Notes: generated by a model not told the origin, from the sequence alone. Positions 1,112 to 47,860 are shown, counted from the first letter of the stretch. The stretch: 64,000 nt of DNA from Convolutriloba macropyga (GCF_964194025.1 NC_134472.1:22692001-22756000); one strand, 5' to 3'. Program-made: numbers and translations.

Positions 1112-3072
1112 AAACATAGCCGGCAGCTTGCCGGAAAATAGCTGCGATAGACGCTTGAGGCCCTCCATGAATTGAAACAAATAAAGAAATAAGATATAGA
1201 CAGATCGACCACCAGTCCCTCAATAGACGACTAGAATTTTTGGGATAGATTCAGACTGTCAATTTTATGACACATACGATCTATAACAAAAAAGCCCTAA
1301 AAGAACCTTTTTAAAATTGACATTTGAAATCAAAATCCTAAGACTAATACTCAAGAATTAGGGCATATAACGTTGGCACTACTTAGATGCACACTATTGA
1401 TCTCTAATTAGTTAATGTTCACAAAATTTAAAGTTCCATAAGAGAGTTCAGAAGTCATTCTCTTGAGAGGGGTAAGTCACGCAATTGACCTAAAAGCAGG
1501 AAAGACGTCACGCACAAATTTTATCTGCAAAGCAGTAGATGTCATTAAAAAAGTCAATTCCGAGACGTCAGGTCGCAAGAATCAATGATGGAGACAACGA
1601 ATTAAAAAATATAGCTGGACAAGTCCTGACGTACAATTCAAAAAATTTTCATTGACTAAACGAAAAATTAGACATAGAACGGACTATGAATGGATTGCAA
1701 AGAATAATCATCGCTAACACTTTGAAGCTTTTACCCCTAGGGCAAAATTTGACCATTTTAAATATAACTATTTCAAAAATATGTTGAAAACTACTTTTTC
1801 TTTCTGAAATTGCTGCAGTATTATATCTGCAAGGCCTGAAAAATTGACCAATTTTTTTTAAAAAATGAAATCAATAGCAAATTTTAATGAAACGTGTCTA
1901 AAATGTGATATTATAATCCTTAGAATCATTTCTGTGTCTCTAGAGGCTATCCAGTAACCCATTTCCAAACCTTAAAAAATTAATTTATTCAAAGATCGAT
2001 AGGCAATAATTTTTTAAAATTTCGGATTTCAAAAAATACAAATTAGTTCTTTTAAAATGATAAAAACATTCAATTGCCCCTAGCAGTTATTTAATAACAT
2101 ACTATCAAACCTTGTTTGATGTTATCTGGTTACTTAGGCAAGAAAAACAGAATAAAGACAAAGGTTTTGAAAAAAAAACTTGAAAAAATTGCTAAATTTC
2201 TCAGAAAATTTTTACAAATCGAAAGGTTAAATAGTTGAAAACAAATCCATTGAAATTATCAACCACGCAGTAATTTTTTTCAGACCGTGGAATAGGTTTC
2301 CTGGCACTTAAGAATGGACAAATATCAAAAATTGACAAAAACTTTAGGAAACCTTTAGGAAAACTTTAGGAAAATTGCAGATTTTATTTTGAAAAATGGT
2401 AAAATTCGAGGCATTAAAATGTTGAAAATCAATCCATTGTTACTAGAAAAATAGCAGTGCCCTATTATCAAACCTTAAAAGAGATTCCCTGTCCCCTTGA
2501 AAAATTGCCAAAATTGGGATCATTTTGCGTGTTTGTATTTCTAGTACGAAAACATATAGCTCATAATATGGTCTTAACAAGTAATTTTTTTGTCCCGCAA
2601 AAGTTTTTCATCAACTTTGAAAAACTTCAAACTTAGACTAATCAAACAAAAACTAAAAAAAATCACAAAAACATGAAAAATTGCACCATTTTCAGCACAA
2701 AAACTCCTAAAAATGACCTTTTAACCTTAAATTGAGGCCATCCCAGCAGTTGCACCACTCTTATCACTTGAAGGACTACTAACGTCCACTTTGGGCCTCT
2801 TATGAAACTCAATGCCCGCTTTACCTGTTTTATCCCGTTTTGAAAGACCAAAGTCACTGAAAATTGCGTGAACACATCTTAACAAAACACACAGCGCCCC
2901 AATACAATTCAAATTCTTTGAATTGTAAAAAATTAGGAGCGCAATAATAGCCACCTGAAATTGCTGACGCGGCTATTAAAAAAAAGGCAGCGCCCCAATA
3001 CAATTCAATTTCTTTGAATCGTAAAAAATCACGATGTCCCCAATAATAGCAGCTATGGCTTCGCCGCTATTA
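1112..3072 (-). mobile_element. Composite non-autonomous Helentron-type element (A1 host with C guest from ~1608; cap stack C-A-C-A at 2890-3072)
   Basis: 3' end stem-loop CCGGCA-GCT-TGCCGG beside subTIR AATAGCTGC; 5' cap AATAGC..GCTATTAAT; no TSD; body matches the copies at 42826, 47861 and 55766. Confidence 0.75.
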
Positions 3073-4586
3073 ATAAAACATACCCAGCAGATTGCCAGAA
3101 AATAGCCGCCTTTGATTCCCATAACTCTATTGGGATTGAAAGAAAAGAAAATATCAATAAAAAGTGATTTTTGTATAACATTTTTAAGTGGGATTTATTT
3201 TGATGTCATTTCATAATTGAACATACTCCTGTCTCCCAGTGAGAGGCTACAGGGTCTAGTATCAATACCAATAAGCATTATAGATAGTAAAAAAACTTAT
3301 GAGAACAAAGTTCAGGTTTCTGGCATCTAAAAATGGGTTTTATGGGTTTACCCCTTTCTATTTCTGACTTTGATTTTTTTACTGACTCTTCATTTTGAAT
3401 TGCTTTGCTGAGCAGCTGCTGTTTAAAAGAACTTTGAGCAGAATGACAGAAGAGTGAAAATAGCCTAGAGAAGTCAAAAAGATTTTACGCAAAATGTCGA
3501 AAAAGAGGCAAAACGGGTAAAGCAAAAAAAAAATCGACGAAGTAAAGAAACATAACAGGACAAGCCCTGACGTACAATTCAAAGAATTTTCATTGACTAA
3601 ACAGAAAATTAGACATAGAACGGACTATGAATGGATTGCAAAAAATCCGATCCGAAAAATCGAAAAAAAACAGTACAAAATCAGTACAAAATTGCCGCAT
3701 GTGAACAAAAAACCACTAGCGAGAAAGCGAATTTTTGTTCAAACACCTTTTTCTCACTCTACTTTAAAATTAGAGCGAAAAAATTTCACGCCCCAAAATC
3801 ACTCGTTATTTCGCTCCACTTCCTGTTTCAGCGTGACCAAAATCATTACTCCAATTTTACTTCAAAAATCATTAAAATGTGTGAACAGCTCGATCTAAAA
3901 AAAACATAGCAGGACAAGTCCTGACATACAATTAACTTTCAATGACTAAACAGAAAACTAGACCAAGAACGGGCTATGAATGGATTGGCAAAACCATTTA
4001 GAAAAAAATCCGATCAAAAAAATCAAAAAAACTGTAAAAATCAAAGTGAAATTGCCGCATGTGAACAAAAAACCACTAGCGAGAAAGCGAATTTTTGTTC
4101 AAACACCGTTTTCTCACTCTAATTTAAATTTAGAGTGAAAACATTTACGCCGCAAAACTTTCGACGTGAACAAAATCACTACTCCAATTTGACTTCAAAA
4201 ATCATGAAAATGTGGGAACAGATCTTAAAAAAAACATAGCCGGAATAATTCCGGAAGACTCGGAGAAAATTGTCCATACTTATGATTAAACAACTAGAAC
4301 AACTTTTGTGAACCCTAAACCTCCACAAATGGCGTAAAAAATTTAAGGGAGAATAGAAACGGCATTCAAAAACAAATTGAATAAAAAACTAGAAAAAAAT
4401 TATGAGTTTTTTTAATAGTACAAGGAAACAAAGCCGAATAAACTTCCTTTGCAATTAGAGCAATGGAAATCATAATACGTTAAGAAACTTATCTAAGATT
4501 TTAAAAAAAGAAAAACTGCAAATAAAAAGAATAATGGTTTAAAATTTCTCAATTTTTCCGTCAATTTTCCTAAGAAAATAATTTAT

Positions 4587-5088
4587 AACATAGGTGGCAG
4601 ATTGCCAGAAAATAGCCGCAATTGATTCGTAGATCGGCAGTCTAAAAAAACAGTAAAAAAGAAAAAAAATCGTCTTTTCATTGAAGGCTGATCTGTTATA
4701 TTTTGATTGAAAATCTGTATAAGTTATTGCTGCCTCTATTAGCTGATCTCAAATAACCTTCATTTAGAGTGACACACACCCATTTGACCTTATCTCTTTG
4801 AATTAAAGTAAATAAAAGTCAATTTCAAATTGAGGAAGTCATTTTTGAGAGTGAGGTAAGTCAAGTGTGACCAAAAATTTAATCACGCGCATGAACAAAA
4901 AGAAAAAATTCGCTCCACTAAGAGCGAAAAATGACGTCACACATGCAATTCAGTTAAAATTGCATGAACGAATGAACAAAAAGTGGCTGTGGCGTCATAT
5001 GGTCGTAACAAAAATCATGACGACGAAATAAAAGAAAAACCAAGAGAAGGCCAATAATAGCCCCAGTTATCGCTGTGCGGCTATTAAT
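4587..5088 (-). mobile_element. 'Empty' A2 Helentron-type element (~500 bp)
   Basis: Complete, with both termini; same sequence as 5804-6248 plus 7934-7982 but without the B guest. Confidence 0.82.
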
Positions 5089-6248
5089 CAACAAAACTTG
5101 AATCAATTGTTATCTGAACATTCTTAGTAACAAGCTTCTATTCAAATCCCACTTAAAGCATTAAAACAAAAAAAACAGGCAAAAAATCATTAAATTTTGT
5201 CTAAAAATCCGCAAAACTGATCAAAAACCTCCAAATTAGCATTGAACTCAAATTAAATACTTGAAACCTTCAATTCTTACCAAAACAAGCCTAAAACTAA
5301 TACAATACCATAATCAAACCTCATAACCATCAAAAGTTGCAACAACTGTTTTTAAAAGCCGCACGTGAACAAAAAAATTTTGCTCGCTTAGAGAAAATTT
5401 TTCACACATCAGTTTCTCGCTCTCTCGAAAACAGCGGTATGAACAAAAACCACTCTTTTTTCGCTCCGCTCTTCACTTTTGTTCAGCACCAAAATCACCC
5501 AAAAATTTTTCACGCCTTTCATTTCCCGCTTCAACAATCGCTCCAATAAAATTGATTTAAAAAAAGGACTTCTCCAATACTCTTCGAGTCGTAAAAAAAG
5601 ACAGCGCCCCAATACAATTCAAATTCTTTGAATTGTAATAAAAAATGGTGAAAGACGCCTGCCTGCACATTGCTCCAAGTAACTATAAATAGTGAATTCC
5701 AAGTATCATTTTGAGACACACTTCTTACAGCCACGCTTTCTACAAAGACGGCCAACTTTAGTCACTCCAATTTAAATCACTCCAATAAAATTGACTAAAC
5801 AAAAACATAGCTGGCAGATTGCCAGAAAATAGCCGCAATAGATTCGTAGATCGGCAGTCAAAAAACAGTAAAAGGACAGACCAAAAAAATTCGTCTTTTC
5901 GTTGAAGGCTGATCTGTTATATTTTGATTAAAGATCTGTATAAATTATTGCTGCCTCTATTAGCTGATCTCAAATAACCTTCATTTAGAGTGAAACACAC
6001 CCATTTGACCTTATCTCTTTGAATTAAATTAAATAAAAGTCAATTTCAAAGTGAGGAAGTCATTTTTGTGAGTGAGGTAAGTCAAGTGTGACCAAAAATT
6101 TAATCACGCGCATGAACAAAAAATCTCGCTCCACTAACAGCGAAAAATGACGTCACACATGCAATTCAGTTAAAATTGCATGAACGAATGAACAAAAAGT
6201 GGCTGTGACGTCATATGGTCGTAACAAAAATCATGACGACGAAATAAA

Positions 6249-7931
6249 AAACATAGCCGGAAGAATTCCGGAATCGACTCGAAGCACCAAAACATCACAA
6301 AAAGCTGAAGCGATTACCTTTTGTATTAAACCATAAACCCATTACCTCCCCGGGTCTGATCTAAAAATCGGTGAAATTTGAACCACTGTCACCAAAAGAA
6401 AATGCAGCAAAATTTTATTATTGAAAACCTTTGGTAACGTTAAGTCTGAAATATTTAGGATGGTCAAGAAACTGATAGCCAGACAAAGCTGACAGGGCCA
6501 TCAATTTCCCTCAGATAATTATTGATTCTAATCTCAAAAAGATCGCGAAAGCAAATGGCAGATATAAACTTTTCAAAAAAGACAGGAAAGTCAAAATTAT
6601 TCAAAAAAGAGTGTTCAAACATAAGAATCAGAGAAACACTACAATTAGATTTCTAATCACGGCAATTAAGCCAAAAATAATACATGATTCTTCCTTGTTG
6701 TATATATGCTAGACAACATGATTTCATACTAATTCAAAAAATTAAATTAATCAAAGAAACACAAAAGCAACAGAATGACATTCAAAGGCAAAAAATCGAC
6801 TGAAAACAATACCAAGCCCGGAAGAAAATTGCAATGAATAGTAATAAGTAGAAACGTTGGAAAAGACTTTCTAGCAAACTTCCTGTAGTGCCTTCTTTTG
6901 AATTAAATCCATTGCAAACCGAAACAACCAAGATCTAAGAAAAAGCTGAATTCATTCAATTTTTTAACAACTGAAAAAATCAATATAACGAATATAAAAT
7001 TAGGTGCCAGGACAAAACTAGAATGATACAGACAAGAATGTGAAGAATATGGAACCAATGTTAGGAACAAAAAATCAAGAAAAACGAGTACATTTCATTG
7101 ATCAGCATTCGAGACATAGAAAAGACAACGTGTCATTCGAGACAAAAATCCAACTTGCTGAACAGAATAAAACAAGAAAAAGCAGAATTCAGACATGCGA
7201 AACAATGAAACATTTTGCAAAAAAGTGGTCAAAAAATATTTAAGACTGCATTTATGAAAAAAATTTATCTGTTTTTTCAAAAAATTAACACCAAAAAATG
7301 ATTGAATTTTTATTGAAACAAAATTAACGTCCCTCATGTTCCCCAAAATACTATTTCTAGTAATTAAAAGCAAAATACAAACAAAAAACTGAAAAAAATT
7401 GGCAAAAAAGAGGCATTGAGTATAAGAATTATCAAAGGGAAGTTGCCATATTAACTGATTTTTGACAAAAAACAGCTAAAAGATCCAAAAATGAAGTAAC
7501 TAATAGAAAAAAAGCCAAAAATTAAATAAAAAATCAAGAAATATGTGCCAATTTCGCATTTGAAACGCAATTTCAGGCTATGCAAAATACTGTGCTATCA
7601 ATTTCCGGGGTTTACATTTCAACATAGCATCGATTAAAAATTATTTGTACAAAAAACCAAATTACAAGCAAAAAAACTAGGCCACTTAGACGAAAAAACG
7701 GCTAAAAATGGTTATCTATGTGCCATTCAGTCAAAAACTACTTTTCAATGTCAAAAAGTCATTCACTAAACGCAGCGCATGATCAAAAAAAACTTCTCTC
7801 GCTCAGAAAAAAATAGTTCACACTGCAATTTTACTCGCTTTCGCTTTTAGGTCAAAACATCGTCTGAACGAATAGTACTTTCGGTAAAAGAAAACCTTAA
7901 GAAAACCAATACTCCTCTTCGAGTCGTAAAA
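6249..7931 (-). mobile_element. B-family Helentron-type element (~1.7 kb) inside A2
   Basis: 3' stem-loop CCGGAA-GAA-TTCCGG and subTIR CGACTCGAA / TTCGAGTCG; homologous to 30020-32177, 37484-39278 and 44975-46461. Confidence 0.8.
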
Positions 7932-8316
7932 AAACCAAGAGAAGGCCAATAATAGCCCCAGCTATCGCTGTGCGGCTATTAAAAAAGACTTCTCCAATAC
8001 TCCTCTTCGAGTCGTAAAAAGACAGCGCCCCAATACAATTCAAATCCTTTGAATTGTAAAAAAATAGGAGCGCTATAATAGCCGGCTGAGAAGATGAGGG
8101 CGGCTATTAATAAATGAATTTCGTAATATCAGCTTGATGCTTATGAAAGCTCGACAAAAATTTAGACCTCAATCACGTAAAAAAACGCGCATTTGATATG
8201 CTTTTCAAGATTACCATTTAGAATGTTCTACGCAGAAAATGTTTTACAAGGTGTCTTTGAGAGAATTTAATTATTTCGTCATTATCATCAAACGCTGATT
8301 GATCAACAAAAGAGAC

Positions 8317-13045: not shown

Positions 13046-13197
13046 GTGGAAATTATTTCACTTAAGAAATTTACAATTAACATTTCATACCAATAATGTT
13101 TATATAGGCAGAACATCAATTAAAATTGACTTCAAAAACATGCAGGCAAGTGAAATCAAAGACCACTTTTAGTGAAACGCATGAAAAAAACGAAAAC

Positions 13198-13567
13198 AAC
13201 CGACTAACGTTGGAAGAATTGCTGGAGGCTCGAGTAAGGTCAAATCTATTGCAGTCTGCTTCAGTGGGAACTAAATTCACTGTTTCAAAGGACAGTCAAT
13301 AAAGTTATTATATACCACTACAAACACTAATAAAATTTAAAGTAAAAAACATACAAAATTGTGCGCACTTCTTAGGACTAATGAACTGCCGCCACTTGAA
13401 TTCAGCTGCTGACGCTTGTGAATGAGAGAAATTTAGATTCTTGTGAATGAGAGAGAAACTTAGATTATGCAAAAATGAAAAAGTCAAGGGCGCAAAAGTC
13501 AAAACGGTCAAGCAAATACTTGCCATGAAAACAGCCGTTAGTATACCGAAGAGTCATGCAATAAAAA
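13198..13567 (-). mobile_element. Diverged E-family-related element
   Basis: Starts AACCGACTAACGTTGGAAGAATTGC like 22628 and 47229; right part resembles the E body. Confidence 0.45.
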
Positions 13568-15731
13568 CACTAAACACTACCTATTTCAGAAATATCAAGA
13601 AAACTAAAAATACAGCCAATTTTAGCTTGAAACGTGGTTAGGTCTGGGCAAGCAGGTGGGAGCACAGGTAGGTGAATGGTCTGTAGTAGAGAGTAAAGCG
13701 ACATAAATGAGATCAATTTACCTATTGAGTTAAAAAAAAGAAGCACAATCTGACAACTTTTTCCTGTCAATTCTCCACCAGATGCAACTCCAAACCACTT
13801 GTTCTTAATAGATCTTCCATTACAGTTTTTGTACGTGATAACAACACATGATATAAAAACAAATTGATCCATACTGACCCCAATCCTTTTTGTTTCCAAA
13901 CTTTTTCCAATAAATTTGGAAAAGGATTGGAAACAAAAAAATAAATTCTAAATCTGATCACAATGAAGTTTTTTTCACACAACACAGGTAGTGCCATCAG
14001 AAAATGTGGAAAAATCTATGGTAGTACTACCGCTTGTGTTCAATTAGTGAATAGACCCACTTAAAAACAAACATCCAGAAAGGTCAAAAAAGCAAAAAAA
14101 TATTTTCTGAAACTAAAGTTTCCACAATTATTTCAGTGGAAAATGGTCTTTCAAACTTTCTGATCGACCCTGTAGTAACATATCTAAAAGAAAATCAGCA
14201 GAACATATAAGCAGAACATAGATAATTGAAACCAAGAATGTATGCCAAAAGGCATTGAAACAAAAAGATATGAGAAAACGTCAAAATAGACCTAACTTGT
14301 CAAAATTTTTAATCAATTTTTTTTCAAAAACAACTCAAAATTAATATAAGTCAGATAAAAAAGATCGCCAAAATAGCTTAATAAACACACTTCGACCATA
14401 AACTCCCCCAAAATACGACCCAGGCTCGCCACACCCGAGTGTTTCAGTACTGAGCCTGCGTATTTCCATAAAACCAGTACTGAAACAGCTCATTTACATC
14501 AAAAAAGTAGGTCATTATGTCCAGAAAGAAAACCAGAACAACTATTCAGACTGTTCACAGTAATCCATTCTGAATGTTTCTTATTGTTTCATTATTTGTT
14601 CTGCAGCATCAGCTTCAGCGGTGATTGAACTAAAATTTGTGTCACAAATTTGATGATAACATTAATGTACACTTTGTTGTTATCCTAGTATAGTTTCATT
14701 CTTATTGGCAAAGTATCGCCCGTCCTCTATTCGATGTATATTTACTCTTTTACATCGTCTTTCCATTTAGCAGTAGTGTTATCATATTGTGAGAATATGC
14801 CGGTGGTGTGCTGTAACTCAAACAGGTTAAAAAGAGAATGGTTTTAGGCTGATAGTAGTTATACAATAATGTTAATTAGGCTGATAATTGTATGATAATA
14901 GTTATTAAGAGATCAAAATCAGAATAAAATCAGAAGTACAAACTTACTCTGAAAACATCCTTTATCAGTATAAATTGTGCAAGTAATAGAATCTGTGCAA
15001 GTATAAAACATTCTATATACAGTCTCTGGAATTACAATGGTTCAGTACTGGGTGGTCGGCCCGGGAAACAAAAACGAAGAACGATACAAAAACGTATAAA
15101 TAAAACGTATGAAATGACAAAATATGACAAAGTGCAATACTTGCTCACAATGGTCAAAAACGGTTCCAAACGTACAATTTCGAGTTCTACCACTTTGACA
15201 GAAGAAGTTAGAATTAAAACTATTAAACTGCTCTCAGAAAGCCGCACCTGATCAAAAAGTTCGCTCCCTGATAGCATTTTTGCACAACCAATTTTCTCCC
15301 TTATCTTTCGAAAATTGTCAAGAACAAAAGCACAACTCTCTTTTCTCTCTGCTCGTCAATTCTGTCCAGCAACAAGTGAAAATCAATATTTCAACACGTG
15401 CGGAATTGATTTTTTACATGTTCCAGAACAACTCGAACGATTTAAAAAAAAGATGACTATAACTCCTGTTCGAGTCGTAAGAAAACCAACACGTTTACAA
15501 AAAATGCTTCAAACTTCATTTGAGAGCAATTAAAAACAGTATGCGAAATTGGTCAGACAACGGAGAATTATGCTCAGCTGATATTTCGAGTCTTGAATAG
15601 AACCACAATCTGTGTTTGGAAAAACTTAAAAGACCGACTAATTGTCACAAATTGATGGCTTCAATTGATTCAATTCAAACTAGCTCCAATGAAACAGCTT
15701 CCCCAACACGCACATACATACATCTTCAAAA

Positions 15732-16209: not shown

Positions 16210-16356
16210 CTTCAAAAATCTGTAATCTGTAATCGATATTCTAACCTAAGTAGGTTATACAAAAATCAACACTAAAACACTATATAGAAAGACTCATTAG
16301 TTCGTTCGAGCACTACGAGGCGGGTAAACAAAAAGGACCTGCTGGTTGGTAGTAGA

Positions 16357-19300
16357 TTTTCGGCTGGTTGGTAGTAAATTGATTGGCTTTCATTCGAACA
16401 GTTTAATAGCCAATTTTTTTTAAAATCATAAATTCCTAATTCTTGCAATTAAAGCAATAAGTTTTCGTCCTGCGGAACCAACCGCAGTAACTTAGCGCGC
16501 TTTTTCAGAGCGTAAGGAGAAACTGCAGCCATTCTCCAAAGACGCAAAGTAAAACACCAGGACTACCAGTGAATCGATGAACATGAACAGTAATAATCGC
16601 AAAATTTGATGAATGCAAGTCAATATTGGTCGAAATGAATGATAAAACAAAAACATTTCGAGCAATTTCAGTATTCGAAAGAGCTTGAAATGTTTAATTG
16701 ACATCAAACAATTAGATCGCCAATTCCAGTGGCCAAAAATTGCAACAACACGACAACGAGGAAAAGTAACAGCAAGTGTAGGATAATTTTGGAAACGCAT
16801 AACAGTTTCAAAACACTACTGAGATAACTCATTCAAATTAATGTTAAACCAACGGCATAGCCTCGAGAGCAAGAACAGGCTTCTTAGAGTCCTCGAGAAT
16901 TTCAGCAAGCACAAACTAACATAAAAAACTCAACAACGCAATACACACCAACTTGTTGCAAAACAATAGGGGCAGAGGCACAATGTAATTGCCTCAGAAG
17001 CACATCATTGAGACTTTTAGTTAAAAAGACCGCTCAAAAAATCTCAATTCAAATACTATCCTTATTTTTAAATCAAATTTCAATCACCAATCTCTCAAAT
17101 AATAGCCAGATAATGATCTAGTTCGGGTGACTTCTATTCAATTTCAACGATAGTTTACATTCTCAATATGAGCCCAGAAGTCTTGAGTGGCAAAAAATCG
17201 TGTACGATTTATCACGCACACCAAATCAGCTGCAGAAGCATCGGTGGCTTTTTTACAATTCAAAGAATTTGAATTGTATTAAGGCGCTGTCTTTAACAAC
17301 TCGAAGAGGAGTATTGGAGAAATCCTTTTTTAAATAAATTTTATTGGAGAGAATTTTGAAAGCCGGAAATGAAACACGTGAAAATTTTGGAGTGACTTTG
17401 TTGCAGAACAAAATGAAGAGTGGAGCGAAAAGAGAATGTTTTTTGTTCATATCGCTGTTTTCTAGAGAGCGAGAAATTGAGGTGTGAAAAAAAATCTATA
17501 AGCGAGCGAAATTTATTGTTCACGTGCGGCATTTTAAAGCAGTTTTTTGTTCAATTTCTTTTGCTTAAGGTCCGTTATAATTTTGTTTTAATTTTCGGCT
17601 GGTTGGTAGTAAATTGATTGGCTTTCATTCGAACAGTTTAATAGCCAATTTTTTTTAAAATCATAAATTCCTAATTCTTGCAATTAAAGCAATAAGTTTT
17701 CGTCCTGCGGAACCAACCGCAGTAACTTAGCGCGCTTTTTCAGAGCGTAAGGAGAAACTGCAGCCATTCTCCAAAGACGCAAAGTAAAACACCAGGACTA
17801 CCAGTGAATCGATGAACATGAACAGTAATAATCGCAAAATTTGATGAATGCAAGTCAATATTGGTCGAAATGAATGATGAAACAAAAACATTTCTAGCAA
17901 TTTAACTATTCGAAAGAGCTTGGAATGTTTAATTGACAGCAAGCAATGAGATCGCCAATTCCAGTGGCCAAAAATTGCTACAACACGACAACGAGGAAAA
18001 GTAACAGCAAGTGTAGGATAATTTTGGAAACGCATAACAGTTTCAAAACACTACTGAGAGAACTCATTCAAACTAATGTTAAACCAACGGCATAGCCTCG
18101 AGAGCAAGAACAGGCTTCTTAGAGTCCTCGGGAATTTCAGCAAGCACAAACTAACATAAAAAACCCAACAACGCAATATACACCAACTTGTTGGAAAACA
18201 ATAGGGGCAGAGGCACAATGTAATTGCCTCAGAAGCACATCATTGAGACTTTTAGTTGAAAAGACAGCTCAAAAAATCTCAATTCAAATACTATCCTTAT
18301 TTTTAAATCAAATTTCAATCACCAATCTCTCAAATAATAGCCAGATAATGATCTAGTTCGGGTGACTTCTATTCAATTTCAACGAGAGTTTACATTCTCA
18401 ATATGAGCCCAGAAGTCTTCTTGAGTGAGAAAAATCGTGTACGATTTATCACGCACACCAAATCAGCTGCAGAAGCATAGGTGGCTTTTTTACAATTCAA
18501 AGAATTTGAATTGTATTAAGGCGCTGTCTTTTACAACTCGAAGAGGAGTATTGGAGAAATCCTTTTTTTAAATAAATTTTATTGGAGACACTTTTGAAAG
18601 CCAGAAAAGAAACACGTGAAAATTTTGGAATGACTTTGTTCAAGAACAAAATGAAGAGTGAAGCAAAAAGAGAATGTTTTTTGTTCATATCGCTGTTTTC
18701 TAGAGGGCGAGAAATTGAGGTGTGAAAAAAATCTATAAGCGAGCGAAATTTTTTGTTCACGTGCGGCATTTTAAAGCAGTTTTTTGTTCAATTTCTTTTG
18801 CTTAAGGTCCGTTATAATTTCGTTTTAATTTTCGGCTGGTTGGTAGTAATTTGATTGGCTTTCATTCGAACAGTTTAAATGCCAATTTTTTTTAAAAAAT
18901 CATAAATTCCTAATTCTTGCAATTAAAGCAATAAGTTTTCGTCCTGCGGAACCAACCGCAGTAACTAAGCGCACTTTTTCAGAGCGTACAAAGAAACTGC
19001 AGCCATTCTCCAAAGACGCAAAGTAAAACACCAGGACTACCAGTGAATCGATGAACATGAACAGTAATAATCGCAAAATTTGATGAATGCAAGTCAATAT
19101 TGGTCGAAATGAATGATAAAACAAAAACATTTCGAGCAATTTTAGTATTCGAAAGAACTTGAAATGTTTAATTGACATCAAACAATTAGATCGCCAATTC
19201 CAGTGGCCAAAAATTGCAACAACACGACAACGAGGAAAAGTAACAGCAAGTGTAGGATAATTTTGGAAACGCATAACAGATTCAAAACACTACTGAGAGA

Positions 19301-20092
19301 ACTCATTCAAATTAATGTTAAACCAACGGCATAGCCTCGAGCGCAAAAACAGGCTTCTTATAGTCCTCGAGAATTTCAGCAAGCACAAACTAACATAAAA
19401 AATTAAACAACGCAATACACACCAACTTGTTGGAAAACAATAGGTGCAGAGGCACAATGTATTTGCCTCAGAAGCATATCATTGAGACTTTTAGTTTAAA
19501 ACACCGCTCAAAAAAATTCTCCATTCAAATACTATCCTTATTTTTGAATCAAAATTCAATCACCAATCTCTCAAACAATAGCCAGATAATGATCTAGTTC
19601 GGGTGACTTCTATTCAATTTCAACTACAGTTTACATTCTCAATATGAGCGCAGAAGTCTTGAGTGGCAAAAAATCGTGTACGATTTATCACGCACACCAA
19701 ATCAGCTGCAGAAGCATAGGTGGCTTTTTTACAATTCAAAGAATTTGAATTGTATTAAGGCGCTGTCTTTTACAACTCGAAGAGGAGTATTGGAGAAATC
19801 CTTTTTTTAAATAAATTTTATTGGAGACACTTTTGAAAGCCAGAAAAGAAACACGTGAAAATTTTGGAATGACTTTGTTCAAGAACAAAATGAAGAGTGA
19901 AGCAAAAAGAGAATGTTTTTTGTTCATATCGCTGTTTTCTAGAGGGCGAGAAATTGAGGTGTGAAAAAAATCTATAAGCGAGCGAAATTTTTTGTTCACG
20001 TGCGGCATTTTAAAGCAGTTTTTTGTTCAATTTCTTTTGTTTAAGTTTCATTATAATTTTGTTTTAATTTTCGGCTGGTTGGTAGTAATTTG
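16357..20092. repeat. Tandem array, 3 units of ~1237 bp
   Basis: CGGCTGGTTGGTAGTAA recurs at 16361, 17596, 18833 and 20072 (periods 1235, 1237, 1239); each unit ends with C and B2 Helentron caps plus part of the B2 body. Confidence 0.95.
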
Positions 20093-21312
20093 AAAGTTTC
20101 TAGAAATTCATATGAATTTTATGCTAAGTCGGAGGTTTTTTATGCATTTTGCTGATTCTTGGGCTATTGCGATTTTTTTACTACTATTTTTTTACTGCCT
20201 CAAATGGGTATTGAAGAGACCCCTTTAACTTGAGAAATGTCTAGATAAGAAATGGTTTCAGATTTTTGGATATGAAGCATTTTTTGTTGAGAAATATGAC
20301 AAAAAATGGCAAAAATTGAAACTAATTTTCTGAATTTTTTTTTCAGTTTTTCGGTTTTTTTTCTGTTTTTAGACAAGTTTCTTAGCCTATTATGACTTGC
20401 ATATTGTTTTGCGATCATCTGAATACGCTACCGGACGAAAGGAATTCTTTGGATTTATGTGCTTTTGTAATATTGTAACATTTATTAACTTTTTCCAGTT
20501 TTTAGTCCAAGTTGTTTGTAAGAGCTTATTTTTTCATGTTTTGGCTTCAAGTATTTCAAAAATTTTTTCATAAGTGGTTTTAGTAGGCACTGGTTGTTTT
20601 GATGAAGTAATATTGGCAGATATGGCTATTTCGAGACCTGAATTTATGACAAAATTTGATCAGATTTTTTGTTAGATTTTCTTGTTTTTACATTTATTGT
20701 TTTATGGTTTTGTTTCAAGATAATCATAAATTAGTTGAGGCACGTTTTGTCTGATGAGTATTTGGATGGCGTTTAAGTGGATTTGCACTTCGAATGGTTT
20801 CCGGAATTCTTCGGGCTATGTTTATTTGAGATCTGTTCACAATTTTCATGACATTTGAAGTCAAAGTGGAGTAGTGATTTTGGTCACGCCGAAACCGGAA
20901 ATGGAGCGAAAAAGCGGCGTGAAATTTTTTGAATCAAGTTTTAAAAAAGAATAAGAAATCAGTGGTTTAACAAAAATTCGCTTTCTCGCTAATGGTTTTT
21001 TGTTCACATGCGGCAATTTCACTTTGATTTTTAATGTTTTTTGATTTTTTGGATAGGATTTTTTTAAACTGGTTTTCCGAATCCATTCATAGTTCTAAGC
21101 TTAGTTTTTTTTCAAACCAGTTTTTTTTCTCGCTAGAGGTTTTTTGTTCACATACGGCATTTTGACTTTGATTCTCTGTTTTTAATTAAATTTTTGATCT
21201 GATTTTCTTAATGTTTTTCCCAATTCACTCATAGTCCGTTCCAGGTCTGTTTTTTGTTTAGTCACAGAACATTTCTTTGAATTGTACGTCGGGACTTGTC
21301 CTGCTATGTTTT
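19726..21312 (+). mobile_element. Composite Helentron-type element C > B2 in plus orientation
   Basis: C cap TTACAATTCAAAGAATTTGAATTGTA, then B2 cap; B2 3' end at ~20800-20823; C 3' end GGGACTTGTCCTGCTATGTTT at ~21291-21312. Confidence 0.75.
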
Positions 21313-21368
21313 TTATTTCTCGGGGTGGTCAAATGGTCGCAACAACAAAAGAACAATATATTAAAAAA

Positions 21369-22170: not shown

Positions 22171-22627
22171 CAAAACCAATTCTGTCTTGTCATAATTAAC
22201 AGAACAATTCAGTTGCAGGGTACGATAAATCTGGTGGAGCATATATGAGACTAATAGAGTCAAAAAGGTAAACAAAACATAAAAAATAGCAAAAAGATGA
22301 AAAAATTAGTTCAAACTTGTTAAAGTGCTTGAAACTTATATCCTCAAACCCAATTTTCATCAAAATCCAACCATTATCCTCAGATAAGTTTTAAGAGCTT
22401 CACTGGTCTCAAGATAGAAAAAAAGAGAAATGCAAAAAAAGCTGCAAAATTTCAAAATTCGCGAAAACCTTTTGTGTTTAAGTTGGCATTATCAATACAT
22501 ATACCTCAAAAACCAGACAAAAAATTCTTGCTCGCGAAAACCAATTTTAATTAAAACCATTTATATTTTTTTACAATTATAGTGAGACCCATTGACAAAA
22601 AAGCGGATGAAAAACCTTGAAAACATT

Positions 22628-22985
22628 AACCGACTAATGTCGGAAGAATTGCTCTCGAACGACAGGCGGGTAGAAAAACATTTAACCCCGCCAGGATTCA
22701 AACCACTGACCTCCCGAACATCAGGCAGATGCAGTAACCACACGACTTTCAGTCACTTGTTTTTGCTATGCTATAACAGTCTTTATATTAGCAACAAGCT
22801 TTACTTCGGAGTGATAGCAATAGAGATCACTCAAAAATGAAAGACGAAAGCGTGAAAAAGTCACTTGAGAAATCAAAGTATGTTCTAGAAGAAAAGCGCA
22901 AAATGGTCAAGCAAAAAATTTGCATAAAAAAGACCAGCACGTTTAAACTAATTGCTATGAACTTCGTTTAAGAGCAATTAAAAAC
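22628..22985 (-). mobile_element. E-family Helentron-type element carrying a tRNA-like cassette
   Basis: 3' stem-loop CCGAC-TAAT-GTCGG; subTIR AATTGCTCTCGAACGA vs TCGTTTAAGAGCAATT; homologous to 47229-47625 and 1-126. Confidence 0.75.
22684..22752 (-). ncRNA. Degenerate tRNA-like (A-box/B-box) sequence
   Basis: ...GTGTGGTTA...GGTTTGAATCC... followed by T5; no intact cloverleaf. Confidence 0.5.
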
Positions 22986-23017
22986 AGTTAAGCCAAATTG
23001 CTGTACATAATTTAAAA

Positions 23018-29604: not shown

Positions 29605-32230
29605 AACATAGCCGGCAGATTGCCTGAATAGCTGCGAAATAGACTTATGTGCCGTAAAATACAGATGGAAAAAGATACAGAAGTGAGTTGATAATAGTTA
29701 TCGCCGCCGCCTACAAAACTTACAAGTTTATTTCAAAGGAGGTTGTTTTTGGGTGCAAAAAAATTTTTCCTGTCGCGTCTCGAACCGGCGATCTCCGGAT
29801 TAACAGCCAGTCGCCTTAACCACTCGGCTGTCGGACCATACAATCTGTTTTCTGACAATCAACTTTGTTTTAGGAACAGATTCTGTTTCTGAATAACCGC
29901 AATTTAGGTCACGCAGAAAGCGTGAAATCAAGCGCGAAAAAGCCATTTAAGCAGTGACGAGACAGAATGTTCTAGAACAAATGTAAAACGAAAATGAAGC
30001 GTCAGACGACGAAACAAAAAAACATAGCCGGAAGAATTCCGGAAGCGACTCGAAACCGCAAAACCTCACAAACAAAATCCTAATTGCAGCTGAAGCAATT
30101 ACCATTTGAATTCAACCATTAACTCATTACCTCCCCTGGTGTGATCTAAAAATTGGCGAAACTTAAACCACTGTCACCAAGAAAAAAATGCAGCAAAATT
30201 TTATATTGTTGAAAACGTTTGATAACGTTAAAAAATCCGAAATAGATAAGCAGGTCAAAATACTGATGGCCTAAAACAGCTGAAAGGGGTATCAATTGCC
30301 CTCCAATAATTCATGATTCTGATCTCAAAAAGATCAGAAAAGCAAACGGTAGATAACAATCTTAGAAACTAAGTTAAATCTTTTCTTTAAAAAAAAAAGA
30401 ATACTCAAATTTAAGAATCAGAAAACCACTATAATTACAGTTCTAATCACTGCAATTAAAACAAAAGACGGCACATACTTCTCCCGTGTTCTGCATATGC
30501 TAGACAACATGATTTAAAACTAATTCAAAATTAAAATAATCGCAGAAAAGACAAGCAGCAGAAAAATGTTCAAAGGCAAAAAATCGTTTAAATTAACACC
30601 AAGGCCGGAAGGAAGTTGCAGTAGATAGTATTAAGTAGAGCTTTTGGAAAAAGCTGGCTAGCAAACTCTCAGTACTGCCTTGTCTTGAATGAAATCAATT
30701 GCAAACAGAAATGACGAAAATCTAAGAAAATGCTGAAATCATTCAATTTTTTAACAACTGAAACAACCAAAAATAAATGTGCCATAAAAAGCTGCCAGGA
30801 CAAAACTAAAATGATACTAACTAGAATGATAAGAACATGGACACAATGTGAGGAACACCGTAATAAAAACAGATTCTTGATTTTTGAAAGTCAAAAAAAA
30901 ATTAAATTCAAGAAAAACGAATACATTTCATTGTTCAGCATAGAGACATAGAAAAGATAACTAGTCGTCCAATATAAAGATCTATCCTCCTGAAGTGAAC
31001 AAAAAAATAAGAAAAACCAGATATCAAACATACGAAACATTAAATATTTTACAGAAAAAGGTCAAAAAAACTTTTAATACTGCTTTCATGAAAAATGGAA
31101 GCTGAAAAAATCAATATACCAAAAATAAAAATAGGTGCCAGGACAAAGCTAGAATGATACTAACTAGAATTTTAAGAATATGGGCACAATGTAAGGAACA
31201 CCGTAACAAAAAAGCATTCTTGTTTTTTAAAAAGTTAAAAATCAAATTAAAAAATCAAGAAAAACAAATACAGTTCACTGCTCAACATTCGAGACCTAGA
31301 AAAGATAACTAGTCATCCGAAACAAAAATCTATCCTCCTGAAGAGAACAGAAAAAATAGGAAAAAGCAGAACTCAAAAATATAAAACATTGAAACATTTT
31401 GCAAAAAAAAAATTATCAAAAAACTTTTAAGACTGCATTTGCAGCTTCACCTGTTTTTCAAAAACTGAACTCCAAAAAATGATTGAATTTTTATTAAAAC
31501 GCAATTAAGGTCCCTCATATTGCACAAAAAGACTATTTCTAGTAATTACAATCAAAATACAAACAAAAAACTGACAAAAATCGGGAAAAAACTACCAAAA
31601 TCGGATTAGCATATGTATAATTTTATAAAACAAAAACACACCGAGGTAGAGAGAGGTGTTAAGTATATGAATTATCAAAGGGAATTTGCCAAATGAACTG
31701 ATTTTTGACAAAAAGACGGTTAAAAGATCTAAGAATGAAGAAATTAATAGAAAAAAGTCAAAAATTAACTAAAAAATCAAAAAATATGTGCCAATTTTCA
31801 AATTGAAACCCATATTCAGGCTCTGCAAAACACTGTGGCATCAATCTCCGATGTTGGCATTTCAATATAGTATCGAATAAAAATTATTTCTACAAAAAAC
31901 CAAATTACAAGCAAAAAAAATTGGCCACTTAGACGAAAAAACGGCTAAAAACGGTTATCTATATATGCCATTCAGTCAAAAACTACTTTTCAAAGTCAAA
32001 AAGTCATTCACTAAACGCAGCGCATGATCAAAAAACTTCTCTCGCTTAGCGAAAATTTGTTCACCAAGACAGCTTTTCTCACTTTCGCTTTTAGGTCAAA
32101 ATGCCGCGTGAACAAATCTACTTCCTGTAAAAAAAAAAAACCGAGAGAAAACCAATACTCCTCTTCGAGTCGTAAAAACCAAGAGCACCGCAATATAGCT
32201 ACGCTCAGCTTACAGCTTCGCAGTTATAAA
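29605..32230 (-). mobile_element. A3 Helentron-type element (tRNA-like cassette) with B guest at 30020-32177
   Basis: SubTIR ATAGCTGCGAA / TTCGCAGTTAT; the B copy has a ~350-bp internal duplication (~30760-31440). Confidence 0.78.
29768..29838 (-). ncRNA. tRNA-like sequence (GTT at the anticodon-equivalent position), probably non-coding
   Basis: AGCCGAGTGGTTAAGGC D-arm/A-box and GGTTCGAGA B-box; T-stem and acceptor stem pair poorly; downstream T run. Confidence 0.55.
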
Positions 32231-33108
32231 AAAAATTGAAATCTGATATAGCATTCAATAGGTTCCGTACTTTTTGCGTTGACAAATGTCCGCAAATACT
32301 CCATTCGCAAACACTTCATTTTTCTTCTCAAAACAATTCGCTAATAGCGACAGAAATTTTTCCAGCCAACAGTCGGGCAGCCTTACCACTAAAAAGATAT
32401 TTAACATTGAATAAAGATTCGCAAAAGATACTTCTGGAGACCGTCAAGCTGGTACACATCTCAACCTATTGATTTTGGTGCAAATTAGCTGAAACAATTA
32501 GCTTTTAAAATTTTCTGAAACAATTAGCTTTTAAAATTTCCTGAGATAGATTATGCATAAAAAGCACAACCAACCTACAATACAAGAGGATCAGAAAAAA
32601 ATCAAGAAGACAAAAATGTCCATGCGTAAAAAATGCCCATGCGTAAAGTAGGACTTGAGTACAAAAGAGCGACCAAAAATCGACCAGGAGCAGCCCTAGA
32701 AACTGACTAAAGTTGAGACGACCTGGCGAAGAGAGGACACTAGGAACTATAAAAGTTGACAACGATACCGATTACCAAAAAGTCAAACGAATAAAGAATC
32801 ACAAAGAAATCATAGTGGTCACCAAAGCTCTTTTTATCAATCAATTATTGCGCGTTTCGTTTTTGTCCTTTGTGTTATCATGATTTTTTGAAACAATCAC
32901 AAGTTTAGGTCCAAATTAATACATTTAAACCATTTCTTTTGCGTTATATTTGATATCATCTCGCAGATAAAAGGATATATCACAACTTAAAATTAATAGT
33001 TGTCGACTTTTAAAGCACCGTTTTAGACAAATCTGTTTTATTCCCAGCATTATTCGAAAACAATGACATTTTGCCTAGTTTTCAGGCATATTCAGACACT
33101 TTTACTAC

Positions 33109-37030: not shown

Positions 37031-39326
37031 AACATAGCTGGCAGATTGCCAGAAAATAGCCGCAATAGATTTGTAGATCGGCAGCCTAAAAAACAGTAAA
37101 AAAGACAGACCAAAAACATTGTCTTTTCATTGAAGGCTGATCTGTTATATTTTGATTAAAAATCTGTATAAGTTTTTGCTGCCTCTATTAGCTGCTCTCA
37201 AATAACCTTCATTTAGAGTGACACACATTCACTTGACCTTATCTCTTTGAATTAAAGTAAATAAAAGTCAATTTCAAATTGAGGAAGTCATTTTTGAGAG
37301 TGAGGTAAGTCAAGTGTGACCAAAAATTTAATCACGCGCATGAACAAAAAGAAAAAATTCGCTCCACTAAGAGCGAAAAATGACGTCACACATGCGATTC
37401 AGTTGAAATTGCATGAACGATTGAACAAAAAGTGGCTGTGACGTCATATGGTCGTAACAAAAATCATGACGGCGAAATAAAAAAAACATAGCCGGAAGAA
37501 TTCCGGAAGCGACTCAAAGCAACAAAACTACACAAAAACCGTAAATGCAGCTGAAGTCTTTATCCTTTGTATTAAACCTTTAACTCATTACCTCCCGAGG
37601 TCTGATCTAAAAATTAGTGAAATTTAAACAACAATCACCAAGAAAAACAAAATGCAGCAAAATTTTATATTATTGAAACCGTTTGGCAACGTTAAAAAAG
37701 AGCGACATGAATAGGATGGCCAAATTACCAATAGCCTGAAAAAACTGACAGGGTTATCAATTGCCCTCAAATAACTCATGATTCTCAAGGTCGCGTAAGC
37801 AGACGGCAAATAATAACCATAGAAACTAAGTTAAATTTTTCAAAAATAATGCGCAAATTTAAGAATCGGAAAACCACTACAATTAGATTTCTAATCACTG
37901 CAATTAAGTCAAAAACAACACATACTTCTTCCTTGATATATATATATTCCAGACAACATGATTTCATACTAATTCGAAAAATAAATTAATAGAAAACACA
38001 AGCAACAGAATAAATCAAAGGCAAAACATTGTTTAAAGACAATAACAAGGACTGAAGAAAACTGCAATAAGCAGTAGTAATAAGCAGAAATTTTTGGAAT
38101 AAGTTTTCTAGCAAACTCTCAGGACTAATGTATGATGAATGAAATCATTTGCAAACCAAAGAAATGAAAATCTAAGAAAAACCTGAAAATATTCAATTTT
38201 TAACAACTGAAACAATCAAAAAACGAATAAAAATGTAGATGCAAGGACAAAGCCAGAATGATACAAACTAGAAGGTGAAAACTATGGACAGAATGTAAGG
38301 AACACAGTAACAAAAAGACTAATTGTTGATTTTTGAAAGTTAAAAATAAAATAAAATAAATGAAGAAAACGATTACATTTTAATGTTCAGCATTCGAGAC
38401 ATAGTAAAAACAACGAGACATCTGAGACAAAGACCTATCATCCTGAACGGAACAAAAAAAGGCAAAATCAGAATTCAAACCTACAAAACATTTTGCAAAA
38501 AAATGTTCAAAATTTTTCAGACCGCATTTATGAAAAAAAAATTTCATTAAAAAAAAAGGTTTTCGAAAACTTAACGCCAAAATATGATTGATTTTTTATT
38601 GAACGAAATTTAAGTCTCTCATGTTGCACAAAAATACTAGTGCTAGTAATTAAAACTAAAAAACAAACAACAAACTGAGAACAATTGGAAAAAAACTACC
38701 AAAATCGGATTAGCATATGTACAATTTTATAAAACAAAATTACATGGAGATAGAAAGAGGCGTTGAGTATATGATTTATCAAAGGGACGATCCTATGTTA
38801 ACTGATTTTTGACAAAAAGACGGCTGAAAGATAAAAAATGAAGAAATTACTAGAAAAAAAGACAAAAATTAACTAAAAAATCAAGAAATATGTGACAATT
38901 TTGAACTTCAAACGCATTTTCAGGCTCTGCGAAACACTGTGGTATCAATTTCCGAGGTTTACGTTTCAATATAGCATCCAATAAAAATTATTTCTACAAA
39001 AAAGCAAACTGCACGCAAAAAAAGGGGCACTTGGACGAAAAAACGGCCAAAAACCGTTATCTATATGTGCCACTCAGTCAAAAACTACTTTTCAAAGTCA
39101 AAAAGTCATTCACTAAACGCAGCGCATGATCACAAAACTTCTCTCGCTCAGAAAAAATTAGTTCACTGCAATTTTACTCACTTTCGCGTTCAGGTCAAAA
39201 CATCGTCTGAACGAATAGTACTTCCGGTAAAAAAAAAAAACCTAAAGAAAACCAATACTCCTCTTCGAGTCGTAAAAACCAAGAGAAGGCCAATAATAGC
39301 CCCAGCTATCGCTGTGCGGCTATTAA
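37031..39326 (-). mobile_element. Complete A2 > B composite Helentron-type element
   Basis: Same architecture as 5804-7982. Confidence 0.82.
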
Positions 39327-46508: not shown

Positions 46509-46570
46509 TCAATAGACTTGCATGTCATATTAACTGAAATTTTTGAGTATAAATTTTGAGAGAAACGGAC

Positions 46571-47625: not shown

Positions 47626-47860
47626 ATTAAATACAAGCACACCCAAGTCATAATTTTAACTTGAATAACATTGATAAAAGGACAACGTGAAGAAAGAAAA
47701 ACAAAATTTGAAGGCCAAAGATAAATCAGCTCCACAAAACATCTGAATAAGCAATCCTTTATTCAAGCCCGCTACACATCAAAATCATTGAAAAAAGCTA
47801 GAAAAAGTCTCCGGATTTAAAAGACCACATATTTGAAAAACTTTAGAAAAAAAACAGATA

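What the first reader, a model, noticed from the sequence alone, without database searches (positions are those of the whole stretch)
3076..8110. Russian-doll Helentrons: guests sit just inside the 5' hairpin cap of resident elements
Seen: comparing empty A2 (4587-5088) with filled A2 (5804-7982) shows B inserted without a TSD in the A-run between GACGACGAAAT and the ~50-bp cap. The same cap-adjacent position is used in distinct host/guest pairs: B in A2 (6249), B in A3 (30020), C in A1 (1608, 43325, 56266), C in A4 (3548), C in C (3903), B2 in C (4233, 20823), A2 in B2 (5804) and a B-type cap before an E cap (15466-15535). The bodies contain many other A/T runs, yet I see only one mid-body insertion (4587). 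Established: Helentrons/DINE-1 have subTIRs, a 5' inverted repeat and a 3' stem-loop, and insert at TT without a TSD. Inference: a targeting system in which integration is directed to the 5' end of resident rolling-circle elements (via bound RepHel, or a nicked or extruded hairpin). This would give a safe harbour and composites that several transposases could mobilise. I do not know of this being described.
Basis: partly seen in the sequence, partly recalled or inferred. Interest (0 to 1): 0.9.

Follow-up and report, generated by a model that had tools for sequence, protein, structure and literature searches.

The report
Rolling-circle transposons nested at one fixed spot
Short non-coding rolling-circle jumping genes in this animal genome sit inside one another like Russian dolls, nearly always at one spot 34-60 bases inside the host copy's front end, which points to a preferred landing site that has only partly been described before.

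Summary
Window 1112-8114, and eight further clusters, consist of non-autonomous Helentron/Helitron2-type elements (HINE-like). Each has a 5' 'cap' (subterminal repeat, mostly palindromic, plus a TATTGG box) and a 3' subTIR + stem-loop + CTATGT.

Of about 24 elements with a recognisable 3' end:
- 13 abut a host body exactly at the T-run behind the host's cap (at least 8 different host/guest pairs)
- one is a confirmed mid-body insertion
- one is tandem
- nine lie in other DNA

Empty and filled copies prove insertion without TSD for B in A2 and for A2[B] in B2. Against TT availability the bias is extreme (P about 1e-8 or less). It is not only amplification of a few chimeras. Two A2 hosts are 92.6% identical with identical caps, yet their B guests are 82% identical, so these are separate hits at the same site. 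Some composites (A1[C], the C-cap+B2-cap doublet) did spread as units, and surplus caps fit chimeric excision.

Stacked 5' termini from 'self-insertion' are already published for Fusarium Helitron2 elements. New here are the fixed landing site used across families and B/C families seen only as guests. This scan has noted the same pattern in other windows of this genome.

The parts
1114..1609 (-). A1 host: 3' end (ACATAGCC + GGCAGC..GCC stem-loop + subTIR) and body, ending in GACAACGAATT at the cap junction
   Evidence: paralogs at 42827, 47861 and 55768
1610..2932 (-). C_long guest in A1: C 3' end, a 1.2-kb internal segment, and the C cap (2884-2932)
2933..3078 (-). Cap stack: A4-type cap (2933-2984), C cap (2985-3028), A1 cap (3029-3078). 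Two of these caps have no matching 3' end, so they are surplus caps
   Evidence: fits the chimeric-excision model of PMC5148889
3078..3549 (-). A4 host 3' end and body. Its 3' end directly abuts the A1 cap (head-to-tail tandem). The body ends in ATCGACGAAGTAAAGAA at the junction
3550..3903 (-). C_outer: 3' end and body. Guest in A4 and host of C_inner
3904..4233 (-). C_inner: 3' end and body. Guest in C_outer and host of B2a
4234..4587 (-). B2a 3' end and the 3' half of its body
4588..5087 (-). A2a: complete, empty A2 element (cap 5035-5087), inserted in the mid-body of B2a
   Evidence: empty paralogous site at about 20265-20282
5089..5599 (-). B2a 5' half of body and B2 cap (about 5566-5599)
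5600..5645 (-). Cap of C_inner
5646..5804 (-). B2b body fragment (no 3' end). It ends in CCAATAAAATTGA...AAAA at its cap junction
5805..6250 (-). A2b 3' end and body. Guest in B2b and host of B_a
6251..7934 (-). B_a: complete B element (3' end CCGGAAGAATTCCGG stem-loop; 5' end CCAATACTCCTCTTCGAGTCGT + A-run) inside A2b
7935..8114 (-). Cap stack closing the nest, in bracket order: A2b cap (7935-7986), B2b cap (7987-8020), C_outer cap (8021-8064), A4 cap (8065-8114)
   Evidence: also noted on this window as s1-214663
13195..15545 (-). E host (3' end and body 13195-13530, cap 15497-15545) holding a B-type guest (13531-15496)
16356..21316 (+). Plus-strand cluster: [C cap][B2 cap][B2 body] in three local tandem units, B2 3' end at 20821, C body and 3' end to 21316, then an A-like body end
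29606..32235 (-). A3 host (body 29606-30021, cap 32179-32235) holding B_b (30022-32178)
37032..39327 (-). A2c host (body 37032-37485, cap 39274-39327) holding B_c (37486-39273). 34468-35242 is a local duplicate of the left part
42827..46511 (-). A1b body, then C_b (43325-44972, no cap), then B lacking its 3' 266 bases (44973-46463), then an A1-type cap (46464-46511). Irregular double occupancy of one site
55768..56862 (-). Compact A1d[C_d] composite: A1 body 55768-56259, C 56260-56811 (empty C, body joined to its own cap), A1 cap 56812-56862
22624..22986 (-). Empty E element (reference for the E cap junction)
47224..48365 (-). Empty E element (47224-47626) and A1c (47861-48365), which has an aberrant short 5' end

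Best explanation
These are non-autonomous HLE2 (Helentron/Helitron2-type, HINE-like) rolling-circle elements of at least four terminal families (A, B, C, E). Their integration strongly prefers one site in resident elements of the same superfamily: the short T-run directly 3' of the resident 5' terminal module. That module is the subTIR or hairpin, a shared TATTGG box and a 7-10-nt spacer, and the site lies 34-60 nt from the host's 5' end. The guest always enters in the host's orientation.

Repeated hits give bracket-like nests, with the 3' ends in order on one side and the caps stacked on the other. Two things then happen:
- whole composites are re-mobilised from the outer cap to the outer 3' end;
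- chimeric units are excised from an outer cap to the first 3' end, which leaves surplus stacked caps.

Shown here: the anatomy, insertion without TSD, the site bias, independent hits at one site, the shared orientation, and the mobility of composites.

Inferred: the transposase (or its nuclease) bound to the resident 5' module, or single-stranded DNA exposed next to that module (possibly in a transposition circle), directs strand transfer to the adjacent T-run.
For: Anatomy:
- The 5' subTIR lies 2-4 nt from the terminus. The 3' subTIR is followed by a 5-6-bp GC stem-loop and CTATGT.
- A TATTGG box is shared by the A, B and C caps, and CTATGT by their 3' ends.

Empty versus filled pairs:
- B in A2 and A2[B] in B2, and the E and C hosts.

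Tally and statistics:
- 13 of 15 element-in-element contacts are at the cap junction. One is mid-body and one is tandem. All 14 nested guests (13 at the cap junction, 1 mid-body) point the same way as their host.
- Statistics against TT sites: 2e-12 and at most 1.5e-8. The figure stays below 1e-4 even if only 5 events are independent.

Independence of events:
- A2 hosts are 92.6% identical and their caps 54/54 identical, while their B guests are 82.2% identical (Fisher P = 1.5e-8). The T-run split also differs, 7+5 against 5+7.

Composite mobility:
- A1[C] sits in three different flanks.
- Surplus caps lie at 2933-3028.

Public contigs:
- In the contigs of four public runs, the best-supported joints are all cap-to-cap or body-end-to-cap. 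They include pairs absent from the window: C cap to A2 cap, B cap to B2 cap, and B cap to A4 cap.
Against: - Only one 64-kb window could be annotated in full.
- The contig-based read table was cut to 15 of about 6,600 joints, so genome-wide proportions are unknown.
- Several hosts (A1, A3, A4) have no empty copy here.
- The divergence argument assumes equal neutral rates and no gene conversion among the young, very abundant A2 copies.
- Two loci (5646-5804 and 44973) have 3'-truncated guests at the site. Plain insertion does not predict this.
- The B cap has almost no hairpin, so a purely hairpin-driven mechanism is doubtful.
- No transposase gene is in the window.
Confidence: 0.65

Rival explanations
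1. A few chance insertions near 5' ends created chimeric master copies. Everything seen now is amplification of those composites, with no target preference.
For: - The three A1[C] copies share one junction and about 80% identity in both host and guest.
- The [C cap][B2 cap] doublet is conserved in 5 copies.
- C[B2] at 4234 and 20821 have similar host and guest divergence.
- The families are extremely abundant.
Against: - At least 8 different host/guest family pairs use the same relative site, in hosts with unrelated bodies (A1-A4, C, B2, E).
- A2 hosts are far more alike than their B guests.
- Contigs show further pairs.
- Even with 5 independent events, P is below 1e-4.
Confidence: 0.12
2. 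The junctions are made not by integration of a complete guest but by template switching or recombination during rolling-circle copying. The host's cap/body boundary would act as a pseudo-terminator or nick site, because the second arm of the palindromic cap has the sequence of the 3' subTIR, and strands would be exchanged there.
For: - The second arm of the cap equals the 3' subTIR and is followed after 13-17 nt by a T-run. True 3' ends have 23-25 nt.
- Two junctions at this boundary join to 3'-truncated partners (5646 and 44973).
- Surplus caps exist.
Against: - Most guests are complete from cap to CTATGT and are flanked cleanly by both halves of the host T-run. That would need two precise switches each time.
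- The spacer has no stem-loop like a real 3' end.
- Guests of other families use A-type caps.
Confidence: 0.15
3. The pattern comes from ascertainment, local sequence or assembly. Either nested ends are only noticed beside caps, or the cap-adjacent T-run is simply the best T-run, or repeats were mis-assembled.
For:
- The junction does lie in a T4-T8 run.
- The region is highly repetitive.
Against: - Motif, BLAST and regex scans of both strands for all A, B, C and E termini found no further internal termini.
- Hosts carry 10-30 other T-runs of 4 or more, some of them longer, and these are unused.
- The same joints occur in the contigs of four runs from at least two samples.
Confidence: 0.05

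Closest known systems
HINE / DINE-1-like non-autonomous Helentrons (Thomas, Vadnagara & Pritham 2014, PMC4067079)
   Same: - Non-coding elements with 9-13-bp subTIRs. The 5' one lies 2-4 nt from the end and is itself palindromic, as in the mite HINE-Mo families.
- A short palindrome lies between the 3' subTIR and the 3' end.
- Termini are T-rich, insertion is into T-runs or TT, and there is no TSD.
   Different: - That paper reports only a general preference for T-rich sequence. It reports no fixed landing site inside other elements.
- Here the 3' subTIR sits closer to the end (23-25 nt).
- The autonomous partner was not seen, so calling these 'Helentron' rather than 'Helitron2' is not established.
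FoHeli1/2 Helitron2 elements of Fusarium oxysporum with multiple 5' termini (Chellapan et al. 2016, PMC5148889; PMC13342296)
   Same: - Short 5' terminal pieces (the first 31, 65, 73 or 85 nt, and up to five of them) are stacked in front of a single 3' end.
- Such copies occur at different loci.
- The proposed origin is self-insertion near the 5' end followed by excision from the outer 5' end to the first 3' end. The surplus caps at 2933-3028 fit this exactly.
   Different: - In Fusarium the stacks are from the same family, host bodies are usually not retained, and no landing-site preference is claimed or tested.
- Here the nests cross families, host bodies and 3' ends are kept in bracket order, and the site bias is quantified.
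IS200/IS605 (IS608) and IS91: HUH transposons with transposon-directed or end-like target sites
   Same: Single-strand HUH chemistry, no TSD, and insertion at a fixed short distance from a hairpin or end-like sequence in a fixed orientation.
   Different: These are prokaryotic elements with no helicase fusion (IS608). Their target is a tetra- or pentanucleotide read by base pairing with the element's own end. This is an analogy only. Nothing here shows base-pair guidance.
Site-specific Helitrons of Paramecium (telomeric C4A2 repeats; PMC13085455) and nested maize Helitrons with multiple termini (PMC3288121)
   Same: - They show that Helitron-like elements can have strict strand-specific targets.
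- They show that nested copies generate elements with several termini.
   Different: The target is different (telomere repeats). The maize elements are canonical HLE1 with mainly multiple 3' ends. Neither case lands inside the 5' module of a resident element.

Membership tests
HLE2 non-autonomous elements (HINE / DINE-1-like, Helentron- or Helitron2-associated) | Subterminal inverted repeats, with the 5' one a few nt from the terminus | tested here: met
   - Family A: TTAATAGCCGC... at the 5' end pairs with GCGGCTATT at the 3' end.
- Family B: ACGACTCGAAG pairs with CTTCGAGTCG.
- Family C: ACAATTCAAA pairs with TTTGAATTGT.
- Family E: AATTGCTCTCGAACG pairs with CGTTCGAGAGCAATT.

HLE2 non-autonomous elements (HINE / DINE-1-like, Helentron- or Helitron2-associated) | Short palindrome (stem-loop) between the 3' subTIR and the 3' terminus | tested here: met
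   The stem-loops GGCAnnnTGCC, CCGGAAnnnTTCCGG, GGACnnnnGTCC and CCGACnnnnGTCGG are each followed by (C)TATGT. The DNA folds give z from -1.4 to -4.8.
HLE2 non-autonomous elements (HINE / DINE-1-like, Helentron- or Helitron2-associated) | Insertion into TT or T-rich sequence without target-site duplication | tested here: met
   Empty versus filled A2 and B2 sites. The T count on the two sides varies (7+5 against 5+7), as described for HINEs.
HLE2 non-autonomous elements (HINE / DINE-1-like, Helentron- or Helitron2-associated) | Autonomous partner with matching termini that encodes Rep-helicase (plus an APE nuclease for Helentron in the strict sense) | not testable with these tools
   No RepHel ORF lies in the window. 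An unchecked scan note (s1-263058) reports a RepHel with a GIY-YIG-like tail elsewhere in this genome.
Canonical Helitron (HLE1) | 5' TC, 3' hairpin + CTRR, insertion between A and T, no inverted repeats | tested here: not met
   The ends are T-run + subTIR at the 5' side and CTATGT + T-run at the 3' side. SubTIRs are present and the targets are T-runs.
Composite HLE2 with multiple 5' termini (FoHeli type) | More 5' termini than 3' termini in one unit, with the repeated 5' piece under 200 bp | tested here: met
   2884-3078 holds four caps for two 3' ends. Caps are 34-60 nt long.
Composite HLE2 with multiple 5' termini (FoHeli type) | Composite found at several loci with unrelated flanks (moved as a unit) | tested here: met
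   A1[C] occurs at 1114, 42827 and 55768 with different flanks. The [C cap][B2 cap] doublet occurs at 5566, 7987 and 17249.
Composite HLE2 with multiple 5' termini (FoHeli type) | Stacked termini belong to the same family (self-insertion) | tested here: not met
   Most stacks mix the A, B, C and E families. Only C in C (3904) is from the same family.

The most novel reading that the evidence does not exclude
HLE2 transposases 'home' to the 5' terminal module of resident elements and integrate at a fixed offset behind it. This would be a general property that also explains the stacked 5' termini of fungal Helitron2 elements. Under this reading, families B and C are obligate parasites of other elements: in this window all 12 non-duplicate copies are nested and none lies in ordinary DNA. 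They would live only inside hosts and evolve by shuffling modular caps.
Probability: 0.3. Interest if true: 0.8.

Novelty: new variant of a known kind. Interest (0 to 1): 0.62.

Why it matters
No biochemistry exists for the integration of Helentron/Helitron2 elements. A reproducible, orientation-specific landing site defined by a resident 5' end would give a concrete substrate for testing how these HUH-helicase transposases choose and cut targets.

It would also explain how compound 5' ends and chimeric families arise. It would account for why these elements pile up into dense one-directional clusters, here about 40% of a 64-kb gene-bearing window. It would warn annotators that 'multiple 5' termini' are footprints of targeted nesting and not noise.

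If B and C really live only inside other elements, they would be an example of transposons that parasitise transposons.

Tried and rejected
- **Transposase in the window.** I looked for a RepHel gene. The only ORFs of 130 aa or more are an NDH2-like gene and C2H2 zinc-finger genes.
- **Copies in public collections.** Searches with an A 3' end and a C cap gave 0 hits in the metagenome and viral contigs.
- **Genome-wide test by reads.** The runs are held only as Logan contigs and the output was cut to 15 of about 6,600 joints. It is therefore supportive but not quantitative.
- **tRNA-like segments.** Those seen by eye in A3 and E are not called by ARAGORN or Rfam.
- **Empty A1 copy.** The only candidate (47861-48365) has an aberrant short 5' end, GCGGCTATT joined directly to the body, so the C-in-A1 empty site stays unverified.
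- **Possible second mid-body event.** E_22 lies next to a 3'-truncated C fragment at 23014-23170. No C 3' part lies to its left, so this stays unresolved.
- **Rejected: the longest T-run wins.** A4, A2 and C have longer unused runs.
- **Rejected: a hairpin alone directs insertion.** The B2 cap barely folds yet is used as a host.
- **Rejected: a canonical Helitron reading.** The termini do not fit.
- **Literature.** I found no description of a fixed nesting site in PMC4067079, PMC7492417, PMC11417382, PMC5876387 or PMC13085455. The Thomas & Pritham 2015 review is not held in the library.
Full report
**What is there.**

The window is AT-rich animal DNA with strong A excess on the + strand across many stretches. 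Reading 1-9000 and self-comparison show that 1112-8114 and eight further clusters are built from short non-coding repeats. Most lie on the minus strand. The clusters are 13.2-15.5, 16.4-21.3, 22.6-23.2, 29.6-32.2, 34.5-39.3, 42.8-46.5, 47.2-48.4 and 55.8-56.9 kb.

On its own strand each repeat has two ends:
- The 5' 'cap' is a T-run, then a subterminal repeat 2-4 nt from the end (palindromic in families A, C and E), then a TATTGG box in A, B and C, then a 7-10-nt spacer.
- The 3' end is the inverted copy of the subterminal repeat, then a 5-6-bp GC-rich stem-loop, then (C)TATGT and T's.

This is the anatomy described for HINE/DINE-1-like partners of Helentrons (PMC4067079). It is not that of canonical Helitrons. 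No Rep-helicase gene lies in the window, so 'Helentron' in the strict sense cannot be tested. I call them HLE2-type non-autonomous elements.

**Checking the observation.**

Empty and filled copies prove real insertions:
- A2 empty (4588-5087) reads ...GACGACGAAATAAAAGAAAAA|CCAAGAGAAGGCCAATAATAGCC... In A2b the same two halves are separated by a complete B element, 6251-7934.
- B2 is empty at 5540-5600 and in three plus-strand copies. At 5804/7987 it is split by the whole A2b[B] composite.
- The C body end (...ATGAAAATGTG.GA.CAG.TCTTAAAAA) is followed by its own cap at 56760, by a B2 3' end at 4234 and 20821, and by a C 3' end at 3904.
- An E host (13195-13530, cap 15497-15545) holds a 2-kb B-type guest. 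Two empty E copies give the reference.
- There is no duplication beyond the ambiguous T-run.
- Termini across 3078-8114 close like brackets: A4( C( C( B2( A2 ) ) ) B2b( A2( B ) ) ) ). The five stacked caps lie at 7896-8114.

**Tally.**

I listed every recognisable A, B, C and E 3' end and its outer flank. Motif, BLAST and regex scans of both strands found no others.

| Flank of the 3' end | Count |
|---|---|
| Host body end at the cap junction | 13 |
| Another element's cap (tandem, at 3078) | 1 |
| Host mid-body (A2a in B2a) | 1 |
| Non-element DNA | 9 |

- The mid-body case is verified by a paralogous empty site at about 20265-20282.
- All 14 nested guests point the same way as their host.
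- All 12 non-duplicate B- and C-type copies with a recognisable 3' end are nested. The 9 copies in other DNA are all A or E.

**Is it more than chance?**

- Hosts carry 69-206 TT sites and 10-30 T-runs of 4 or more. The cap-adjacent run holds 3-7 TT sites.
- The product of per-host probabilities is 2e-12, and P(at least 8 of 9) is at most 1.5e-8.
- Against all TT sites of the window, even 5 independent events give P below 1e-4.
- In A4 the guest sits directly behind the cap and not in the T10 run 16 nt further in. So distance from the cap sets the site, not run length.

**Independence.**

- Some composites clearly spread as units. A1[C] occurs in three different flanks with one junction and similar host and guest divergence. 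The [C cap][B2 cap] doublet is conserved in five copies. The copies at 34570 and 37031 are a local duplication.
- The pattern still does not reduce to one or two chimeras. At least eight host/guest pairs involve hosts with unrelated bodies.
- The two A2[B] copies disagree internally. Their hosts are 92.6% identical and their caps 54/54, but their B guests are only 82.2% identical (33/445 against 291/1638 mismatches, Fisher P = 1.5e-8). The T-run is also split 7+5 in one and 5+7 in the other. These are best read as two separate B insertions into the same site.
- Caveat: gene conversion among young A2 copies could mimic this.

**Genome-wide hint.**

- Contigs of four public runs of the same organism were laid on 2860-8120. 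The families are extremely abundant, with 18,000-168,000 contigs laid.
- A2 termini (5803 and 7985) have hundreds of heterogeneous A-rich flanks.
- The best-supported joints are all cap-to-cap or body-end-to-cap. They include pairs absent from the window: C cap to A2 cap, B cap to B2 cap, B cap to A4 cap, and C cap to C cap.
- Only 15 of about 6,600 joints were displayed, so this supports the pattern without quantifying it.
- Notes of this scan report the same 'Russian-doll' pattern in many other windows of this genome, and one follow-up did so in a neighbouring window. These are leads and not independent evidence.

**Mechanism.**

Shown: strand-specific, TSD-free insertion at a fixed site 34-60 nt inside the host's 5' end, used by several families. 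Re-mobilisation of composites follows. Surplus caps (2933-3028: four caps for two 3' ends) match the published model of excision from an outer 5' end to the first 3' end (PMC5148889).

Inferred: the resident 5' module directs strand transfer to the adjacent T-run. Possible routes:
- A transposase bound to the shared TATTGG-box module.
- Single-stranded DNA exposed beside the palindrome.
- Integration into a host's single-stranded transposition circle. This would explain the constant orientation.

A purely hairpin-driven model is weak, because the B2 cap hardly folds yet serves as a host.

A rival is strand exchange at a pseudo-terminator. The second arm of the cap equals the 3' subTIR and is followed after 13-17 nt by the T-run, against 23-25 nt at true ends. 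This rival is favoured only by two irregular junctions with 3'-truncated partners (5646-5804 and 44973).

**Comparison with what is known.**

- HINE papers report only a general T-rich preference.
- Fusarium Helitron2 elements carry up to five stacked copies of their first 31-85 nt, ascribed to self-insertion.
- I found no statement of a fixed landing site shared across families, no retained bracket-ordered nests, and no families seen only as guests.

**Verdict.**

The targeting inference is supported statistically, but its mechanism is untested. I class it as a new variant of a known kind, of moderate to high interest.

Noticed in passing
window 29761-29840 (A3); 22680-22760 and 47320-47400 (E elements): By eye, the bodies of A3 and E carry antisense tRNA-like segments with A-box and B-box motifs (for example GGTTCGAATCC on the opposite strand). 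ARAGORN and Rfam do not call them. Other scan notes mention tRNA-like cassettes in Helitron-like arrays of this genome.
   Followed up: partly
window 16356-20093: Three local tandem units of about 1,237 bp, 96% identical. Each begins with the [C cap][B2 cap] doublet and part of the B2 body. This looks like a head-to-tail array starting at a compound 5' end.
   Followed up: partly
window 42827-46511: Irregular composite: an A1 body, then a C element without its cap, joined exactly at the C cap junction to a B that lacks its 3' 266 bases, then a B cap and an A1-type cap. Either one deletion of about 310 bp or a strand exchange at the junction could explain it.
   Followed up: partly
window 47861-48365: This A1 copy's 5' end is only GGGGCGGCTATT joined directly to the body (AATTCGTCGTC). 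It has no first hairpin arm, no TATTGG spacer and no T-run. It is either a deleted cap or a simpler 5' end form.
   Followed up: no
window 21373-22163: A pair of 330-bp inverted repeats, 91% identical (21373-21697 against 22163-21834). This is a foldback or MITE-like element of another class next to the plus-strand cluster.
   Followed up: no
window 33481-36196 and 34468-37701: A local duplication of about 2.46 kb (99.4-99.7% identity) that copies the flank, A2 and the start of B. It inflates the apparent number of A2[B] junctions.
   Followed up: yes
window 43514-43600: A C-rich low-complexity tract (CCCCTCCCTTCACCCTAAC...) interrupts the C element of the 42827 composite. Its origin is unknown.
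   Followed up: no
window 24408-25325 (-), 53660-54799 (-), 61475-63991 (-): Host gene fragments lie between the element clusters: an NDH2-type pyridine nucleotide-disulphide oxidoreductase exon and C2H2 zinc-finger ORFs. The element clusters therefore lie in gene-bearing DNA.
   Followed up: partly
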